A program made the position numbers and the translations under genes. A DNA stretch of 64,000 nt from positions 62,001 through 126,000 of the IMG/VR virus record IMGVR_UViG_3300046703_000335; one strand, 5' to 3'. Below the pieces are notes generated by a model. That model had not been told where the DNA came from, ran no database searches, and saw only the letters and a program-made list of their open reading frames with translations. The first letter of the stretch is position 1; each line of letters starts with the position of its first letter. Shown piece by piece: positions 5,627-25,794 of this stretch.

Positions 5627-7369
5627 TTATGGGTTTAAAATACCGCCACAAACATAAACTCTTACTGGGAGTCCAGTTGATTGATCCCTTAAGTATATCG
5701 CCTCATAACCCGATCCTGTGCTTCCTATGTACGTTCCTGTAGGGGAACTTGGGTAAATATCTAAGGAATATACTGGTTCGTACATTTCAATAAATGTATC
5801 ACAAATGCCAATTTTAGTATCACCAGAAACTTTAATATTCAAATTTGGTCCACAGATTGTCCATGCAGTACTCGTATCATTAAACAATCCAAAGCGAGCA
5901 TTCAATTGTGAAGTGTAAATTGTATTATACGCTAAAGAGGCGGATCCGATATTATTAGAGACATCTGTTTTAGGTAAAATGTCTAGGGAAGTCATACATA
6001 CACGTGCTTCTATAGTTGCACTATTTATCAGCAAAACATCCATATTACTTATAGAATTTTTAATATTTAAATTAGGACCGCATATCTCCCAATTAGTAGC
6101 ATTAGAGCTATACAGGCCATTTTCAGTGTATAATCTATTTGCATAGATTGTGCTGTATTTAAGAATTGAGGAACCTACATTATAGCTATTATCAGCGTCT
6201 GGCATAATCGCTTTAGTAGTTAGAGTGCCCGCAAAGGTACCTGTCCCGGAATTAATATTACCAACCCATATGCCATCAAAACCTACGCCAGGACCCCCAA
6301 GATTAACACCACAAGGTAATCCTGATATAACTGTTTTGTTTAATATAAGATTAGATGCATTTGAAGAAAATACTGCAGTAGCTGGATCAGACGAATAAAC
6401 GCTAAATGTACCTGCTTGTACTTTTACATCATAATCATATGCAGTAGTCCCTAAGAAAATAGTATTACTATTTAATGAAATAGCCGATAAAGCATCACTA
6501 TTATTATAGAGTTTAAAATTCCCGGATCTTATGTTAATATCAGTTGAATTATCAAGATCACCAATTGTCACACTACTACAAAGATATGGTAAAATAGTAT
6601 TGGTATTGGTATTGGGGCTATTAAGATTTGTAGCAAACACATCACTAGCATATATCTCTCTATAGATTAACGAACTTGATCCTATAGAGTACCCGCATGT
6701 AGAGACAGGATAAACATTATTGGTAATAAGATCCCCGGTAAGCTTCAGCTTACCCCCTGTAGGTAATTCAAGTTGAGGAACGCCCCCTACCTCTCCAAAA
6801 ACATACTGACTACCATTTACACTAATGGTGTATTTGTATATCGTAGAATTATCATATAACTCTGTATAAACATTTTTAAAAGCAATAGTACCGGTAGAAC
6901 TCGTACCACTTAAACTAAAATTAGTACTGAGCGTTAAGTTATTCGCAGAAGCTTCAAAATCACTGCCTATGTAAATAGCATTATCAGGACCGCTTATAAC
7001 AACCCCACAAATAGCCATAGTCGGAAGAGATAAATCAAAAATTCCAACATCAACACCTGATCTACCTACAAGTTTAACCATATTTTTGGCAACATTGATC
7101 TCAGATCCAGCTTCTCCAGGAGTAAGGCTTATATCAGATAATGCATTATATGGGTCAAATAGAGTTTTATAAATCTTTGCAATAAAATCATAAGTTCTTT
7201 CACCAGCTATTCTCTCAGTACGTCCCCATTCATCGTCTGTATCAGTTTGGGGCACATTGAGGATAGCACCAGGAAGCATCTCATCACCAACACCATAATA
7301 TATGCTCTTTGGTCCTTTTGAAAAAGTTTCATATATTGAGCTATATGAAAGAAAATCACTGTCAGCCAT
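5627..7369 (-). CDS. tail fibre/virion fibre protein
   Basis: Repeats of I(L/M/Y)P..d.s.niGS.sl.Y..IY (about 4-5 copies) typical of phage fibre shafts; Ser/Thr/Gly-rich; AAGGAG RBS; late-promoter motif upstream. Confidence 0.65.
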   Translation of the reverse strand: MADSDFLSYSSIYETFSKGPKSIYYGVGDEMLPGAILNVPQTDTDDEWGRTERIAGERTYDFIAKIYKTLFDPYNALSDISLTPGEAGSEINVAKNMVKLVGRSGVDVGIFDLSLPTMAICGVVISGPDNAIYIGSDFEASANNLTLSTNFSLSGTSSTGTIAFKNVYTELYDNSTIYKYTISVNGSQYVFGEVGGVPQLELPTGGKLKLTGDLITNNVYPVSTCGYSIGSSSLIYREIYASDVFATNLNSPNTNTNTILPYLCSSVTIGDLDNSTDINIRSGNFKLYNNSDALSAISLNSNTIFLGTTAYDYDVKVQAGTFSVYSSDPATAVFSSNASNLILNKTVISGLPCGVNLGGPGVGFDGIWVGNINSGTGTFAGTLTTKAIMPDADNSYNVGSSILKYSTIYANRLYTENGLYSSNATNWEICGPNLNIKNSISNMDVLLINSATIEARVCMTSLDILPKTDVSNNIGSASLAYNTIYTSQLNARFGLFNDTSTAWTICGPNLNIKVSGDTKIGICDTFIEMYEPVYSLDIYPSSPTGTYIGSTGSGYEAIYLRDQSTGLPVRVYVCGGILNP

Positions 7370-7424
7370 AGCGGACTCCTTATTGATATCTCGATAACCG
7401 TACTATCAATAACATATTCGCATT

Positions 7425-7436
7425 AAGAGATTATTA
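7425..7436 (-). promoter_or_regulatory. putative late promoter motif TAATAATCTCTT
   Basis: Exact 12-mer also at 30594 and 57591; lies right after the replication-operon terminator and before a structural gene. Confidence 0.6.
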
Positions 7437-7439
7437 AAC

Positions 7440-7468
7440 AAAAAAGGCTCTGTAATTACAGAACCTTA
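7440..7468 (-). terminator. terminator of the replication operon
   Basis: AAGGTTCTGT-AATT-ACAGAGCCTT followed by a T tract on the minus strand. Confidence 0.7.
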
Positions 7469-7501
7469 GTTTATAATAAAAGTTTATTAGCCCCTATAAG
7501 A

Positions 7502-8413
7502 TCAATCTACTGGAACAACCTTCAACTTAAACGTGACATAACATTTAAATTTTTCTGGGTGCCGTAGGTATTCCAGATAATGTTCGATAGGTACTTCTTG
7601 ATCCTCTTCCTTACCAAAAACTTTAAGAGTCTCTACATCTCCATGCTTCTCTAATCTAAGCTCCCCCTTATGCGTATATTCTATAGGGCTATCCGCAGTA
7701 GGGGTAGTATTAACCGGTTCATCATCAAGTGCTGCATGATTCCCAGAACCTCCTGTAGAATCAGGATCGATGTTCTCCTGCTTATAATTCTTTTCAACAG
7801 CTTTAAGGATAGAAGGAACTTCTCTTGGAGGAGTATCATGCTCAAGAATAAAATCTACAGTATCCTTGATTATATCCGGATCCTCGGTACTACTGGAGAT
7901 TTTTTCCCAATGTAAATCATTAAACTTGGATTCCCCAGCAGGTTTAGAAAGTTCTACCCGAGCATTCTCAGGAATACGCCCCATATCAGCAGATAATGTC
8001 GCTAATCTCTTTAACCGATGGGGAGTAACATGGAGGATATCTGAAATTTCCTTATCTTTTTTTCCAAGACCATTTAATCGAAGATATGCACGATTGAGGT
8101 CTATTGGACTGAGATTTACACGATTGATATTTTCGTCCAAAGAAATTAGATAAGCTTCTTCCTCATCAGCTTCTATAACTACAAATTCATCTTCAGGAAG
8201 TTCATGGTCATTCCCGAAAGATTCTTTTAACGCTTTAAGTCTTCGCTGTCCTGCGACCACTTCAAAAACTCCATCAGAATTTTTTCTGAGAATAAGTTTT
8301 GAAATAAGTTTATGCTTTTTTATAGAAGTAGAGAGAGACGTGATATCATCAGCATCCCCATCAACAACTGTACGGGCGTTACACTGGGAAATAACAAGTT
8401 CACCAATTTTCAT
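7502..8413 (-). CDS. parB: ParB/Spo0J-like protein
   Basis: NART...ITSLSTSIKKHKLISKLIL...FEVVAGQRRLKAL (GxRR), SLDENINRVNLSPID, then an HTH. Confidence 0.85.
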   Translation of the reverse strand: MKIGELVISQCNARTVVDGDADDITSLSTSIKKHKLISKLILRKNSDGVFEVVAGQRRLKALKESFGNDHELPEDEFVVIEADEEEAYLISLDENINRVNLSPIDLNRAYLRLNGLGKKDKEISDILHVTPHRLKRLATLSADMGRIPENARVELSKPAGESKFNDLHWEKISSSTEDPDIIKDTVDFILEHDTPPREVPSILKAVEKNYKQENIDPDSTGGSGNHAALDDEPVNTTPTADSPIEYTHKGELRLEKHGDVETLKVFGKEEDQEVPIEHYLEYLRHPEKFKCYVTFKLKVVPVD

Positions 8414-21182: not shown

Positions 21183-22967
21183 CTATACCACTTTGCTAAA
21201 AACAGAATTATATAGAGCGTTAACGGAACTCTCATCTTCCTGAAACAATACATCATCATTTTTAAAATCGATGGCTCCTTGAGCAATATCACCAACAATT
21301 TGGTTTATAAGATTTTTCTTACCTTCAAGGATACCTAAAACATGTTCATCAATAGTATCTCTATTGATCATATGGAGCAATAAAATGTGCTCCTGAATGC
21401 TACCAATACGTTGGGCTCTACCTATTGATTGGTAAAGATCCCCATAAGACCAGGGCGTATCATAATATAGTATTACCCCCGCAGCTTGCAAGTTAATAGC
21501 TGCAGACCCTGCTTGAGTGATGAAGATAATATTACAATCCTGGCTCATATCCTGAAAGAGTTTACGAGCATTAGTTCTTGCATTAATATCCTCATCACCA
21601 GTAATCTTAACATGCTTCAATTCAAGATCATTGAGGATAGCTGATAATCTCTTAATACCTGATTTAAAACGCGTAAATACAATAACTTTTTCATCTGAAA
21701 GTTCCTGATCAAAGAGTCTTCTAAATTCAGTTTCTTTTGAACTTTCTCCATCCTCATTAAGCCATCCTGGACCATTTGACACAAGCTGGCAATAGGATAA
21801 TGAAGCTATTTTATTTTTAGCCATTCCCTCTTTTGTTAATGACTCTTCATATTTAATTTTAAGTAAATCATACATCATACTCTCTTTGTCAGTAAGATCC
21901 TCTACTTTACTATTAGCATACTCTTCAAACTTAAAATATCTCTCTTTTATTAATTTCTGATATAGCTCTCCGCTTAGAGCCTTACGATAAAGCTGCTTCT
22001 GAGCTTCTGACATTTCAAGTATAAGTTTTCGAGATATAAGCTGGGGAAGTTCACTAGCCACATCTCGAGTCCTACGAATTAAGAAAAAGGGATCAATAGT
22101 ATCTTTAAATTGAACAAGATTCTTATATCCTGTTACTTTATTGAAATAACGCTTTCTACCTTTTTCCCATCTTGTCATCTTTTTACGAACAGTATACTCG
22201 GAAAAAAACTTTATTTTACCGGGGAATAAACCTGGCACGATCACACGATATATATAGTAAGCCTCTTCTAATCTGTTTTTTATAATCGTGGCAGACATTC
22301 CATAGCAGTATTTAGCCTTACTTGATAATTCACTGGCACCAAACCAAGTTTTGGTTTTCATGTTTTTGAACTCTTGGCACTCATCAAGAGCAATCTGAAA
22401 CACTGGTCCACGATTTTCTGAAAGAAACGTATAATCTTCTTGAACTGCATGGTAATTAACTATTAATACGTGAGCATCTACGGTTGTATATTGCGCTTTC
22501 CTCGCCTCAAAACCACTAATAATACGGCACTTTTTACCTGCAGCTTTTAGATCTTCAATTTTACCATATTCTTGTTTACTCTGCATTTTTCCAAATTCAT
22601 CTTTATACCTAACCTGCCCATAATCATTAGTCAGTACATGAGTAGTAATACCATTGCAGAACTTTTCAAATTCCTCAGCCCACTGTGCCATAGCTGATTT
22701 TGGCGTAACTACTATAAGTTTAAGATTTGGTTCGGACATGAGTCGATAGACATATGCAGTTATCATTTGTAAAGTTTTGCCCAGTCCGACGCCATCTCCA
22801 AGAATCATTCGAGAAAGGGACAGAAAATGAAGGACACCTATAACTTGATAATCGCGCAATTGAGTAGTGGGTTTCAAATATGAACAGGGTTTCAGTGTGG
22901 CTTTTTTTGCCTGGCGAAGTTTTTGTAGGAATGGGTAATTAGAAGGTCTGCTAGAAAAACCAGCCAT
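21183..22967 (-). CDS. SNF2-family (SF2) helicase/ATPase
   Basis: LRDYQ, LGDGVGLGKT, DECQ, MSAT, INLQAA, QSIGRAQRIG. Confidence 0.93.
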   Translation of the reverse strand: MAGFSSRPSNYPFLQKLRQAKKATLKPCSYLKPTTQLRDYQVIGVLHFLSLSRMILGDGVGLGKTLQMITAYVYRLMSEPNLKLIVVTPKSAMAQWAEEFEKFCNGITTHVLTNDYGQVRYKDEFGKMQSKQEYGKIEDLKAAGKKCRIISGFEARKAQYTTVDAHVLIVNYHAVQEDYTFLSENRGPVFQIALDECQEFKNMKTKTWFGASELSSKAKYCYGMSATIIKNRLEEAYYIYRVIVPGLFPGKIKFFSEYTVRKKMTRWEKGRKRYFNKVTGYKNLVQFKDTIDPFFLIRRTRDVASELPQLISRKLILEMSEAQKQLYRKALSGELYQKLIKERYFKFEEYANSKVEDLTDKESMMYDLLKIKYEESLTKEGMAKNKIASLSYCQLVSNGPGWLNEDGESSKETEFRRLFDQELSDEKVIVFTRFKSGIKRLSAILNDLELKHVKITGDEDINARTNARKLFQDMSQDCNIIFITQAGSAAINLQAAGVILYYDTPWSYGDLYQSIGRAQRIGSIQEHILLLHMINRDTIDEHVLGILEGKKNLINQIVGDIAQGAIDFKNDDVLFQEDESSVNALYNSVFSKVV

Positions 22968-22976
22968 ATCAGGTAT

Positions 22977-24276
22977 CCGTTCTATAAAATTTATAAAAAT
23001 TTACCATACGAGTAAATTTTATATTTATTTCCTGCTTCTATGAAACTGCTCTTAGATCTGATGTCTCCAAAAGTCTTACACTTTCTCCACAGGCTTGAAT
23101 TCCTCTCGAACTGAGAGTATCTATTCCGAAATCTTCTATATTTATTGATGCATTTAAATCTCTGTCTTCAATATGACCACATTCACAAATATAAATTCTA
23201 TCCTCTAATTTTAAATCCTCCTTTATATTTCCACATACCCTACAAAGTTTAGAACTTGGATAAAATCTATCTACGTCTATGATTTCACCACCATACCATG
23301 CAGTCTTATACAATGATTGACGCTTTATCTCATTGAATGAAGCATCAGCTAAAGCACCTGCAAGTTTATGGTTTTTCACCATACCTAAGACATTTAAATC
23401 CTCTAATGCAATGTATCTCGGCTTGGTTTTCGTCAAGATACTTGTCATCTTATGGATTGCATCTTTTCGTTGATTACTTATTCTACTATAAATTTTCTGT
23501 ATTTTTAACTTAATCTTATATCTATTATTTGAGGACCTTTTAGTTTTTTTATCAAATTTCTTTCTTGCTAAATTCTTTTGTGCATGAGCTAATCTTTTTT
23601 TTGATTTTCTTAAATACTTGTTATTTTTAAAAACTTGACCATTAGAACATGTAGCTAAATTTTTTATACCGACATCAATGCCCAAGACAGTTTCTAATTG
23701 ATTTGTTATTTCAGGTATCTCTACCTCACAATTAACAGAAACGAACCACTTGCCTGTTATTTTAGAAATAGTCAAAGAGTTATACTTAACATTTTCAGTA
23801 GGTATATACCCTTTTTCCTTTAACTTAACTATACCAATTTTAGCTAATTTAATTTTATCGATAGTAACATGCAAATTACTACTGTCTAAGTGGTAGGTAG
23901 GTATACTTTTATGCTTAGATTTAAATTTGGGAAAGCCAATCTTTTTTCCTTTTTTAAGTCCTCGAAAAAAGTTTTTAAAAGCTTTATCTAAATCTATCAA
24001 AGCTAATTGAGGAGCACACTTAGAAACTTCGTACATCCAAGGAAATTCTTTTTTTTTGCGAGCACATAATGATTTATGTTGGTCTATAGCTGATAAAGAT
24101 CTCTTTTCACTCTCGTATAGAGATATACGCTCCGAAAGACCTAAATTATAAGCAAAACGAGCTACACCGGCACTCTTCTCGAAAAGAGTACGTTGTTTGT
24201 TATTTGGTTTTATCTCAGTTTTATATGATCTATTTATTATCATGTATTATAATAGGCTATCATTAGCATTTAACAG
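22977..24276 (-). mobile_element. non-autonomous TnpB-only IS607/IS200-605-type element (ends inferred)
   Basis: Right end GAAGCAGGAA...TAAATTTTATAGAACGG at 22977; left boundary placed after GGGAGG at 24277 because joining at GG restores GGAGG-9 nt-ATG for the SNF2 gene; no tnpA. Confidence 0.55.
23038..24243 (-). CDS. tnpB: RNA-guided endonuclease TnpB
   Basis: N-terminal HTH (RSYKTEIKPN...ARFAYN), RuvC D (GIDVGIK), E (ALEDL), Zn finger CRVC/CECG, RuvC D (DRDLNAS); all catalytic residues present. Confidence 0.95.
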   Translation of the reverse strand: MIINRSYKTEIKPNNKQRTLFEKSAGVARFAYNLGLSERISLYESEKRSLSAIDQHKSLCARKKKEFPWMYEVSKCAPQLALIDLDKAFKNFFRGLKKGKKIGFPKFKSKHKSIPTYHLDSSNLHVTIDKIKLAKIGIVKLKEKGYIPTENVKYNSLTISKITGKWFVSVNCEVEIPEITNQLETVLGIDVGIKNLATCSNGQVFKNNKYLRKSKKRLAHAQKNLARKKFDKKTKRSSNNRYKIKLKIQKIYSRISNQRKDAIHKMTSILTKTKPRYIALEDLNVLGMVKNHKLAGALADASFNEIKRQSLYKTAWYGGEIIDVDRFYPSSKLCRVCGNIKEDLKLEDRIYICECGHIEDRDLNASINIEDFGIDTLSSRGIQACGESVRLLETSDLRAVS

Positions 24277-24365
24277 CCTCCCTGACCATGTTTCCAAAAA
24301 CAAATCCATCTAATCTATAAGATTTGATAGACAGCTAATAAATTTCCAAAAATTGATAAGTCTAT

Positions 24366-24418
24366 AGTAATGAATTTAAAGTATAAGACTCTATAGCTTA
24401 TACTTTAAATTCATTACT
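24366..24418. repeat. perfect 22-bp inverted repeat (9-nt loop)
   Basis: AGTAATGAATTTAAAGTATAAG-actctatag-CTTATACTTTAAATTCATTACT; an imperfect second AT-rich hairpin follows at 24421-24461. Confidence 0.9.
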
Positions 24419-24484: not shown

Positions 24485-24513
24485 AATCTATATATAGAAA
24501 AAAGTTTTGTCAA
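24485..24513 (-). promoter_or_regulatory. sigma70-type promoter heading the tnpB/replication operon
   Basis: TTGACA (24513-24508) - 17 nt - TAGATT (24490-24485). Confidence 0.65.
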
Positions 24514-24531: not shown

Positions 24532-25794
24532 TTATCGATTCATTCGTGCCAGCTCATCAGCGACACTTTTTAATTTTTTACCAGCTTTTGTGTGCTGCTC
24601 TGATTCTTCATATAAGTCCTTTGCAACTCCACTAGACCCCCCACTATATCCTCCCGTAGACCCGCCAATTCCTCCCTGGGACATGCTCATCGCTGCATCC
24701 TCTTCCATAGAGGCTTCCTCTTCGATGTATCCTGCAAGAACTTTTCGAGCCATACGTTTAATCTTATACTTATTTGAGGAAAATCTTTCATTATTTGTCA
24801 TAGGACTCCCCGTTGGTTTATCTAACTCATCCCCACGTACTCTGTCTTTACTCTGTTCATCTACAGGTTCAAAAGGAGATTTTTCAGTAGGAGGTTGTTG
24901 ATCTGCTTTATCTTTTAAAGAAGGCTGTTGAGGCTGCTCTTTTTGCTGAATATCCTGAAGATATGGTCCTACTATCTTATTAAAATAGTTAGGACCTCCC
25001 ATATAATGACCCCCTGGTACACCATCTGTTTTTGGGATACTATGATCAGGATAAACTAATTGATTTAAACTTAAAGACCAAATTCTAAATTCATCAAATA
25101 TCCCAAAGAAACTTTGATAATTCAAAGGGGGGAATTGCCCTCTTGATGGCACCCCGCCATTCAAAAGGATATTAACGGTATTACTAGGGGGTTCCTTCAC
25201 ATTACAATATACTGATTCACCTGAATTATCTATAGAAATAACATTAGAATTGCTGCCAGGAAAAAGATCAATATCCTTCTCAAATACTTCTGGTGTAACA
25301 TTGGAACTCTTAGGATATATATTAGCAGTACCTTCACTTTTTGTCCCATCCGGATTTAGCATTACTTCGTATACCACTAAGGATTTTCCATCCTGAGAAT
25401 ACTGTGTTGTAGATATGACTACTTTAAGCCAAATAAAATAATCCGCAAAATATTTACCGTGATTACCACCCTTAAGACTATTAACAAGACTGATTCTTTT
25501 ATCATTATTGCTATTATCTTCTAATATGCTTGTGATACCCTTAAAATTTATGCTATTTGAAGGAAGAGCATTGTAGTAATAATATCTTTTTCTTGTGACC
25601 GGTTTATCTACATTCATATCTGGAGCCGGGGAAAGTGAATCCTGTGCAGGAGTCCCAGGGGATTGAGGAGAAATTCCTGATGCAGGAACCGGAGCACTTT
25701 GAGGAGACACTTCTTTTCCCGCTACTACATTTCTTAAAACGTTATTTAAAATTTTTCTATTCAGCATGCTATCCTCTAATGATTGGTCTACCAA
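24532..25794 (-). CDS. hypothetical protein, possibly internal virion protein
   Basis: 420 aa; low-complexity Pro/Gln/Gly tracts; LRNVVA and MARKVLA motifs. Confidence 0.65.
   Translation of the reverse strand: MVDQSLEDSMLNRKILNNVLRNVVAGKEVSPQSAPVPASGISPQSPGTPAQDSLSPAPDMNVDKPVTRKRYYYYNALPSNSINFKGITSILEDNSNNDKRISLVNSLKGGNHGKYFADYFIWLKVVISTTQYSQDGKSLVVYEVMLNPDGTKSEGTANIYPKSSNVTPEVFEKDIDLFPGSNSNVISIDNSGESVYCNVKEPPSNTVNILLNGGVPSRGQFPPLNYQSFFGIFDEFRIWSLSLNQLVYPDHSIPKTDGVPGGHYMGGPNYFNKIVGPYLQDIQQKEQPQQPSLKDKADQQPPTEKSPFEPVDEQSKDRVRGDELDKPTGSPMTNNERFSSNKYKIKRMARKVLAGYIEEEASMEEDAAMSMSQGGIGGSTGGYSGGSSGVAKDLYEESEQHTKAGKKLKSVADELARMNR

What the first reader, a model, noticed from the sequence alone, without database searches (positions are those of the whole stretch)
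22960..24285. TnpB element appears inserted into the Shine-Dalgarno of the SNF2 helicase; its guide would cover the start codon
The right end ...TATAGAACGG is followed by ATACCTGAT-ATG(SNF2), and GGGAGG lies 33 nt upstream of the tnpB ATG. Excision at the shared GG (the IS607-type crossover dinucleotide) gives GGGAGG-ATACCTGAT-ATG, an ideal RBS. The predicted omega-RNA guide is ATACCTGATATGGCTGG... with a TAM ending in GAGG, so the intact TnpB would cut element-free sibling phages at an essential translation signal. This is RNA-guided homing without tnpA, and it also changes helicase expression.
Basis: partly seen in the sequence, partly recalled or inferred. Interest (0 to 1): 0.6.

Follow-up and report, generated by a model that had tools for sequence, protein, structure and literature searches.

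The report
Solo TnpB splitting a helicase ribosome site
A 1.3-kb transposon derivative that encodes only an RNA-guided nuclease (TnpB) sits exactly between the ribosome-binding site and the start codon of a large peat phage's helicase gene, and its guide matches the uninterrupted site of related phages. It is a clean example of a known kind of selfish element, and spread between phages is not shown.

Summary
Window 24276..22977 (- strand, 1300 nt) is a tnpA-less IS607-family element. It has a 33-nt left end, an intact tnpB of 401 aa (RuvC D190/E281/D362 and the zinc finger), and an omega-RNA scaffold ending ...GAACGG.

The boundaries rest on two independent comparisons. Three copies at different sites (the window, L052, L053; 83-84% aa) are alike exactly from GG|CTGTTAA to GAACGG|. 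Six related phages have the same gene order with no element: ...CAGGGG|ATACCTGATATG(SNF2).

The guide therefore starts at ATACCTGAT-ATG-GCTGG and covers the helicase start codon. One relative (L041) has a perfect 23-nt match behind GGGG. The others differ at guide position 8 or at the last base before the target.

The insertion takes the Shine-Dalgarno from SNF2 (pairing -11.1 to -3.3 kcal/mol).

Not shown: cleavage, the TAM, or homing. The carrier lineage was occupied in all seven assemblies examined (at least five separate studies), and no empty allele of that lineage was seen. Relatives at other sites imply trans-mobilised transposition, and a full IS607 sits in a related phage.

Verdict: a new member of a known kind, of moderate interest.

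The parts
22977..24276 (-). Whole element: tnpA-less IS607-family TnpB/omega-RNA element, 1300 nt (counting the right-end GG, not the flank GG)
   Evidence: Copies at other sites are alike from GG|CTGTTAA to GAACGG|. Empty sites in six related phages.
24277..24282 (-). Left flank GGGAGG: former Shine-Dalgarno of SNF2, candidate TAM (GAGG/GGAGG), and the GG crossover
   Evidence: Relatives have CAGGGG/AAGGGG here, 7-9 nt before the SNF2 start. Pairing to a generic anti-SD is -11.1 kcal/mol.
24244..24276 (-). Left end, 33 nt (CTGTTAAATGC...)
   Evidence: Homologous to the 41-nt left ends of L052 and L053 starting right after their flank GG. 40 bp of LE suffices for excision of a C. botulinum IS607 element.
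24240..24269 (-). 9-codon upstream ORF (MLMIAYYNT*): its ATG is 7 nt after GGGAGG and its TGA overlaps the tnpB ATG (ATGA)
   Evidence: Read directly. Not conserved in L052/L053, so a role in coupling is only an inference.
23038..24243 (-). tnpB, 401 aa, intact
   Evidence: Pfam. Aligns end to end with ISDra2 TnpB (8bf8) and 8iaz. D190/E281/D362 align with D191/E278/D361, and CxxC (334) and CxC (353) are present.
22977..23141 (-). omega-RNA (reRNA) scaffold, overlapping the 3' end of tnpB and ending ...AUAGAACGG
   Evidence: A covariance model built only from 16 other elements scores 95.4 bits, E 5e-28, full length, and is the only hit in the 210-kb record. 25 of 29 consensus pairs show compensatory changes.
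23029..23093 (-). RAGATH-18-like core stem of the scaffold (CCUGUGGAG...GAAGCAGGAA)
   Evidence: Rfam RF03064, 24.7 bits, E 0.024, below the gathering score of 44.9.
22957..22976 (-). Predicted 20-nt guide and its DNA template: SNF2 spacer, ATG (guide positions 10-12) and codons 2-4
   Evidence: It starts at the first base after the conserved right end. In IS607 the terminal GG belongs to the scaffold. It is the only match with 2 or fewer mismatches in the own genome.
21183..22967 (-). SNF2-family helicase gene, intact, now preceded by GAACGG in place of its SD
   Evidence: Pfam. 594 aa against 590-593 aa for most element-free relatives. Pairing of the present site is -3.3 kcal/mol.
24485..24513 (-). 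Promoter-like TTGACA-17-TAGATT, which would drive the 5' UTR, tnpB, the omega-RNA and SNF2
   Evidence: Best hit of the scan, 10 of 12. TTGACA and the nearby bases are invariant in the relatives.
24305..24332 (-). Conserved 5'-UTR hairpin, now 1.3 kb away from the SNF2 start
   Evidence: RNAalifold on 8 phages: 12 pairs, 6 of them with compensatory changes.

Best explanation
Shown: this is a non-autonomous (tnpA-less) IS607-family element made of a 33-nt left end, an intact tnpB and its omega-RNA. It lies in a GG between the Shine-Dalgarno and the start codon of the SNF2 helicase gene of a large peat phage. There is no target duplication and no inverted repeats. Its guide is the first ~16-20 nt after the right end (ATACCTGATATGGCTGG...), so it spells the SNF2 spacer, the ATG and codons 2-4.

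Inferred: TnpB with this RNA cuts DNA in which that sequence follows a G-rich motif ending in GG with a purine at -3. That describes the element-free site. Its own copy is spared because the right end reads ACGG, with C at -3. Cutting an empty site, whether made by excision or brought in by a co-infecting relative, and repairing it from the occupied copy would keep or spread the element. The family reached different sites by TnpA supplied in trans.

Side effects, also inferred: SNF2 loses its SD. The SD now stands before a 9-codon ORF that ends on the tnpB ATG.
For: Boundaries: right end; left end. Empty sites are in L037, L038, L039/L040, L041, L042 and L043.

IS607 assignment: the closest full-length relatives carry a MerR+Resolvase tnpA directly upstream (L005 69% aa, L056 74%). 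GG is at both joints. The scaffold has a RAGATH-18-like core.

Intact nuclease. Omega-RNA.

Flanks of seven related insertions are GAGG, GGGG, AAGG, AGGG, TGGG, GAGG, TGGG. The last two are less certain, and nearly all right ends read ACGG. The same self/non-self logic at -3 was shown experimentally for a C. botulinum IS607 element (TGGG against TCGG).

Target: L041 has GGGG followed by 23 of 23 matching bases.

Mobility of tnpA-less copies: the window, L052 and L053 share the short left end but sit at three different sites. L052 is a related phage (its ParB is 88% identical to the window's) and the window is empty at that site.

SD loss. In a metatranscriptome, one assembled contig lies on tnpB. 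This is weak, because DNA carry-over is not excluded.
Against: No cleavage, TAM or RNA-end data exist.

No empty allele of the carrier lineage was found. Seven separate assemblies carry the occupied junctions: the source record, IMGVR_UViG_3300046710_000523, X2 (the same contig as L051), X4, X5, L050, and one further place counted but not shown. The runs laid were assembled contigs, which drop rare variants.

The element-free relatives are only 70-90% identical in the flanks, which is poor for recombination. Five of the six differ from the guide at position 8 or at the base before the target. ISFba1 TnpB does not tolerate mismatches at positions 1-13.

The ISFba1 TAM-reading residues (K80, K83, N121, N122) are C, Q, S, S here, so the TAM cannot be inferred by homology.

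No tnpA is in the 210-kb record, but the record is only ~45% complete.
Confidence: 0.6

Rival explanations
1. Inert passenger. The element landed once, is fixed in this lineage, and no longer does anything. TnpB and the RNA are intact only because the insertion is recent.
For: Every assembly of the carrier lineage is occupied and the tnpB protein is identical wherever it could be compared. There is no tnpA in the record. No perfect target with homologous arms was seen in the same samples.
Against: Three tnpA-less copies that differ by 16-17% in protein all keep full-length ORFs, the left end and a high-scoring omega-RNA. That points to long-term selection on the family rather than decay.
Confidence: 0.2
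2. Ordinary IS607 life cycle only. The element is moved and excised by a TnpA supplied in trans by the host or a co-infecting phage. TnpB serves only to restore the element after excision, not to invade other phages.
For: Copies at different sites with exact GG joints. 40 bp of LE and 60 bp of RE suffice for excision in the C. botulinum element.
Against: It does not exclude cutting of co-infecting relatives, because the same RNP would cut any matching empty site. L041 has a perfect site.
Confidence: 0.35
3. Competition weapon without homing. TnpB cuts the helicase start region of co-infecting relatives that are too diverged to repair from the carrier, which lowers their yield.
For: Flank identity to the element-free relatives is only 70-90%. 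One relative has a perfect target and TAM-like flank. Phage homing endonucleases are reported to act this way (papers listed).
Against: No data on co-occurrence in one cell. Most relatives carry mismatches in the seed or at the flank.
Confidence: 0.15
4. Domesticated regulator (TldR-like). The RNP binds the SNF2 start region, as DNA or as mRNA, to control helicase expression.
For: The guide is physically part of any tnpB-to-SNF2 read-through transcript and covers the SNF2 initiation region. The insertion separates SNF2 from its conserved 5'-UTR structures.
Against: The RuvC triad and zinc finger are intact. The own DNA site has ACGG rather than a purine-GG flank. Related copies sit at unrelated sites.
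Confidence: 0.05

Closest known systems
IS607-family TnpB elements studied in C. botulinum (CboIStron; bioRxiv 10.1101/2023.11.20.567912)
   Same: GG core at both ends and in the target. Scarless empty site equal to TAM plus guide match. The scaffold ends in ...CGG, and self is told from non-self at -3 (TGGG against TCGG there; purine-GG against ACGG here). tnpA-less copies exist there too. Short ends suffice for excision.
   Different: No group I intron and no tnpA. The left end is only 33 nt. The host is a large phage. The insertion lies between an SD and a start codon.
RAGATH-18-guided IS607 TnpBs such as ISFba1 (Cell Res 2024, PMC11061315; PDB 8iaz) and ISXfa1 (PMC10711439)
   Same: Same protein architecture (E 2.8e-62 to 8iaz). 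A RAGATH-18-like core in the RNA. A G-rich TAM ending in G/GG. The terminal GG is part of the scaffold.
   Different: The Rfam score is below threshold (24.7 against 44.9). The ISFba1 TAM-reading residues are not conserved. The flanks of this clade (GAGG, GGGG, AAGG, AGGG, TGGG) do not fit AGGAG or GAGGG strictly.
Free-standing homing endonuclease genes of T4-like phages (Seg, Mob), and 'non-restorative transposon homing' as set out in PMC13565253
   Same: A nuclease gene lies between two conserved phage genes, relatives lack it, and the predicted cut is in the neighbouring conserved gene.
   Different: Recognition would be by an RNA guide plus a TAM. No transfer between phages has been observed here.
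TldR, nuclease-dead TnpB relatives of phages
   Same: Phage-borne TnpB relative with a guide RNA.
   Different: TldRs have lost RuvC residues. Here D190, E281 and D362 are present.

Membership tests
IS607-family transposon | Serine-recombinase TnpA (MerR-like HTH plus Resolvase) encoded in the element | tested here: not met
   There is no ORF between the left end and tnpB. PF00239 finds nothing in the 210-kb record. The closest full-length relatives do have it (L005, L056). It is therefore filed as a non-autonomous derivative, not as an autonomous IS607.
IS607-family transposon | GG at both element-host joints and GG at the unoccupied target | tested here: met
   ...GGGAGG|CTGTT and ...GAACGG|ATACC. 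Empty sites read ...CAGGGG|ATACC in L037 and L041, and ...AAGGGG|ATACC in L042.
IS607-family transposon | No target-site duplication and no terminal inverted repeats | tested here: met
   Read directly from the joints. Only the GG is shared, and the ends CTGTTAAATG... and ...TATAGAACGG are not complementary.
TnpB (OMEGA) RNA-guided nuclease | HTH/OrfB_IS605/zinc-ribbon architecture with the RuvC D-E-D triad | tested here: met
   Pfam. D190/E281/D362 align with ISDra2 D191/E278/D361. CxxC and CxC are present.
TnpB (OMEGA) RNA-guided nuclease | Structured RNA encoded over the 3' end of tnpB up to the right end, with the guide read from the flank | tested here: met
   Independent covariance model: 95.4 bits, E 5e-28. 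25 of 29 pairs have compensatory changes. Sequence conservation stops at GAACGG. The RNA itself was not observed.
TnpB (OMEGA) RNA-guided nuclease | TAM- and guide-dependent DNA cleavage | not testable with these tools
   Needs a TAM library or interference assay.
RAGATH-18 RNA (Rfam RF03064) | Score at or above the curated gathering score | tested here: not met
   24.7 bits against 44.9, E 0.024 in a 501-nt search. It resembles the core stem only.
TldR (nuclease-dead TnpB regulators) | Loss of RuvC catalytic residues | tested here: not met
   The triad is intact, so it is not filed here.
Homing genetic element | Presence/absence at one site among otherwise collinear relatives, with the nuclease's target equal to the empty site | tested here: inconclusive
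   Presence/absence is met among phages with 76-92% identical SNF2. One relative has a perfect target. Within the carrier lineage no empty allele was seen, and transfer is not shown.

The most novel reading that the evidence does not exclude
In this phage group a tnpA-less TnpB/omega-RNA element acts as an RNA-guided homing or competition element between co-infecting phages. Its TAM coincides with the Shine-Dalgarno and its guide with the start codon of an essential helicase gene, so a rival phage can escape only by changing its own translation signals. The variation seen in relatives at exactly the flank base and at guide positions 8-9 would then be escape. More generally, the SD-like TAMs of IS607 TnpBs would place these elements between SD and ATG repeatedly: 6 of 20 relatives have an ATG-led ORF starting 4-10 nt after the right end, against 4.9% of positions after any GG (post hoc P 3e-4; looser definitions give 0.036 and 0.14).
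Probability: 0.2. Interest if true: 0.7.

Novelty: new member of a known kind. Interest (0 to 1): 0.4.

Why it matters
This is a natural case with base-exact boundaries, real empty sites and a target that can be written down. The idea that TnpB elements behave like homing endonucleases between phages can therefore be tested with a few constructs. It also shows a cost that such elements impose on a virus: a replication gene loses its ribosome-binding site and is cut off from its conserved 5'-UTR structures. The resemblance between IS607 TAMs and Shine-Dalgarno sequences may explain where these elements land. No paper in the held library links IS607 targeting with the Shine-Dalgarno or the ribosome binding site.

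Tried and rejected
1. Megablast of the locus against GenBank phages found no match.

2. Exact-pattern scans for the empty site or the SNF2 start in metagenome contigs (twice) and in viral contigs found nothing beyond the identical contig. The empty sites came instead from protein look-ups.

3. I first took L038 as showing a LAGLIDADG gene at the same spot, which would have made it a hotspot. This is rejected: it is an intein inside the SNF2 P-loop, and the L038 intergenic site is empty.

4. I first read the L005 left end as GAGG|ATTAAATG(tnpA). This is rejected: a conserved 61-62 aa ORF lies upstream inside the element, and L005/L056 homology starts further left.

5. The idea that the RBS is the only available G-run in an AT-rich genome is rejected. 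There are 206 GGGG on the coding strand of the window, and enrichment at starts is only ~2-fold.

6. Translational coupling of tnpB through the 9-codon ORF is kept only as a possibility, because L052 and L053 lack the ORF.

7. Transfer of the ISFba1 TAM (AGGAG) by homology is rejected, because the contact residues differ.

8. Right ends of some relatives are followed by tRNA T-loop-like sequence, but ARAGORN finds no tRNA there.

9. Laying four peat runs gave no joints. They are assembled contigs, so this says little about rare empty alleles.

Full report
**Context.** The window is bases 62001-126000 of a 210,408-bp IMG/VR virus record that CheckV estimates to be 45% complete. It comes from peat metagenomes. 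GC content is 34%. In the part studied, all long genes lie on the - strand. The order there is a 1069-aa gene, a 420-aa gene, a 1.56-kb gap holding tnpB, then SNF2, a 226-aa gene and DnaB.

**The observation.** On the - strand, tnpB runs 24243..23038. It is 401 aa with Pfam domains HTH_OrfB_IS605, OrfB_IS605 and Cas12f1-like_TNB. GGGAGG lies at 24282..24277, 33 nt before the tnpB ATG. After the tnpB stop there are 61 nt ending ...TATAGAACGG, with the last G at 22977. Then come ATACCTGAT and the SNF2 ATG at 22967.

**Right boundary.**
- I aligned the 3' regions of 33 related tnpB loci from viral contigs. Across about 20 non-redundant elements, similarity runs up to a shared motif, (G)TAAGTTT-N(3-5)-GAACGG, and ends there.
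- The two closest copies found later are L052 (84% aa) and L053/L055 (83%). They are near-identical to the window through ...GATTTTATAGAACGG and unrelated after it.

**Left boundary.** The same three copies become alike immediately after a flank GG:
- window: GGGAGG|CTGTTAAATGC
- L052: ATGGGG|CTGTTAATTGT
- L053: TCAAGG|TTTGTAACTGC

Its left end is only 33 nt, against 41 nt in L052 and L053.

**Empty sites.** A protein search with SNF2 found many close relatives. I fetched contigs for those with 92, 87, 82, 82, 81 and 76% identity. All have the same gene order without tnpB. Upstream of the SNF2 start they read as follows:

| Locus | Flank | Sequence from the target onward |
|---|---|---|
| L041 | CAGGGG | ATACCTGAT-ATG-GCTGG |
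| L037 | CAGGGG | ATACCTGGT-ATG |
| L042 | AAGGGG | ATACCTG-ATG |
| L038 | CAGGGA | ATACCTGAT-ATG |
| L039 | AGGGGA | ATACCTG-ATG |
| L043 | AGGGAA | ATACCTG-GTG |

The right joint matches exactly. On the left the window has CAGGGAGG where most relatives have CAGGGG. Because the element-to-element comparison places the boundary after GG, the extra AG belongs to the window's own flank. The empty allele of the carrier lineage itself was not found.

**Family.**
- The nearest full-length relatives carry a MerR+Resolvase tnpA overlapping the tnpB start (L005 69% aa, L056 74%).
- Together with the GG at both joints, the absence of a target duplication and the absence of inverted repeats, this makes the element an IS607-family derivative. 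Published work shows GG crossover, scarless excision and G-rich TAMs for this family.
- No Resolvase domain is in the 210-kb record.
- The window, L052 and L053 share the short left end, so tnpA was probably lost before they diverged. Yet they sit at three different sites.
- L052 is a related phage: its ParB is 88% identical to window 7508-8413, and the window has no element at that site.
- The family has therefore kept moving, presumably with TnpA supplied in trans. A full IS607 sits in a 64,397-bp contig whose length matches that of a 58%-identical SNF2 hit. In the C. botulinum IS607 element, 40 bp of left end and 60 bp of right end are enough for excision.

**Nuclease and RNA.**
- TnpB aligns end to end with ISDra2 TnpB and with 8iaz (E about 1e-62). 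D190, E281 and D362 align with ISDra2 D191, E278 and D361, and CxxC/CxC motifs are present.
- RNAalifold on 17 relatives gives three stems with compensatory changes in 25 of 29 pairs.
- The middle stem gives a weak RAGATH-18 hit: 24.7 bits, below the Rfam threshold. RAGATH-18 is the RNA shown to guide IS607 TnpBs.
- A covariance model built from 16 other elements, leaving out the window and its two nearest relatives, hits window 23141..22977 full length at 95.4 bits, E 5e-28. It hits nowhere else in the record.
- In IS607 the terminal GG is part of the scaffold. The guide therefore begins at 22976: ATACCTGAT, ATG, GCTGG... The start codon is at guide positions 10-12.
- The 16-mer has no other match with 2 or fewer mismatches in the genome.

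**TAM.**
- Flanks of related insertions are GAGG (window), GGGG (L052), AAGG (L053), AGGG (L005) and TGGG (L056). Less certain are GAGG (L006) and TGGG (L008).
- The common part is purine-G-G. The right end reads ACGG in most copies (ACAG in a few). This parallels the tested TGGG/TCGG discrimination in the C. botulinum element.
- The ISFba1 contact residues for AGGAG are not conserved here, so the exact TAM is open.

**Would it cut relatives?**
- L041 has GGGG followed by a 23 of 23 match.
- L038 matches 25 of 25 but has A at -1.
- L037 has a mismatch at position 8.
- L042 and L039 have a 2-nt deletion there.
- ISFba1 TnpB does not tolerate single mismatches at positions 1-13.
- Flank identity to these relatives is 70-90%.
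- Seven separate assemblies carry the occupied junctions: the source record, IMGVR_UViG_3300046710_000523, X2 (the same contig as L051), X4, X5, L050, and one further place counted but not shown. The rows alone cover at least five separate studies.
- No joints were seen, but the laid runs are held as contigs only.
- Homing between phages therefore remains a hypothesis. The concept is already in the literature as non-restorative transposon homing.

**Effect on the host genes.**
- Pairing to a generic anti-SD is -11.1 kcal/mol for the predicted empty site. It is -5.1 to -7.8 for the relatives and -3.3 for the present SNF2 site. The tnpB start has none.
- Weak GG-type sites are common in this phage. 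The 1069-aa gene has GAACGG 8 nt before its ATG. SNF2 may therefore still be translated.
- The displaced GGGAGG now precedes a 9-codon ORF whose stop overlaps the tnpB ATG (ATGA). This ORF is absent from L052 and L053, so I treat coupling as a possibility only.
- The conserved promoter-like site and the 5'-UTR hairpin now lie upstream of tnpB. Read-through transcripts would carry the scaffold fused to the SNF2 initiation region.

**Verdict.** The element is a new member of a known kind. The homing and expression claims are reasonable, testable and unproven.

Noticed in passing
L038:2797-3975 (and proteins P0008, P0012, P0046, P0066): Several SNF2 relatives carry a LAGLIDADG intein inserted in the P-loop (GLGK|C...). 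The window's SNF2 has none. The gene caller split L038 into two genes.
   Followed up: partly
window 24485-24513 and 24279-24332 (- strand): The intergenic region before SNF2 has a TTGACA-17-TAGATT site invariant in relatives and a hairpin with compensatory changes (about 24332..24305). It also has an invariant helix UUUCUG/CAGGGG (24300-24295 with 24284-24279) that would hide the SD. This could be a translational operator of the helicase gene.
   Followed up: partly
window 24365-24417 (- strand): A perfect 22-bp hairpin with an 8-nt loop in the part of the intergenic region that is not conserved in relatives. Its function is unknown.
   Followed up: no
L005:714-902, L056:2221-2406 (also L013, L014, L017): Full IS607 relatives carry a conserved 61-62 aa ORF upstream of tnpA, inside the element, because L005/L056 left-end homology starts upstream of it. 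It has no Pfam match.
   Followed up: partly
L052:2501-3767 against window 7280-7580: A related phage (ParB 88% identical) carries an 84% tnpB-only copy downstream of ParB. The window has no element there, and its site reads GAGC rather than GG before the matching bases.
   Followed up: yes
L055:3016-3382 against L053:3767-4762: The same element (identical TnpB) in two samples. L055 lacks 625 bp that start about 6 nt after the right end, so the two copies have different guides. This is an adjacent deletion next to the element end.
   Followed up: partly
L053:229-244: A 16-nt stretch identical to the window's right-end joint plus flank (TTATAGAACGGATACC) lies inside an unrelated ORF, with no homology around it. 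Unexplained; it may be chance.
   Followed up: partly
L003-L030, right-end flanks: 6 of 20 non-redundant relatives have an ATG-led ORF of 50 aa or more starting 4-10 nt after the right end. The background after any GG is 4.9%. The parameters were chosen post hoc, and looser definitions are not significant.
   Followed up: partly
L010, L013, L023 right-end flanks; L030:1399-3849: Some relatives' right ends are followed by TTCGAnnCC-like sequence that resembles a tRNA T-loop, and L030 sits inside a phage tRNA array. ARAGORN calls no tRNA at those joints.
   Followed up: partly
L006:1300-2870: The 63% relative in a 173-kb phage contig splits a gene between two copies of an acidic repeat (DEEDGRLHFCIEMVLDIE / DDEDNRLRFSIELVLDIE). 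Joining the flanks keeps the frame open.
   Followed up: partly
window 1436-1508 and 1807-1866 (- strand): Two tRNA genes found by Rfam.
   Followed up: no
window 24925-25018 and 22227-22365: Runs X2 and X5 differ from the window in tight clusters of substitutions (16 within about 95 nt in the 420-aa gene) while the tnpB element has almost none. This indicates mosaic recombination between strains.
   Followed up: no
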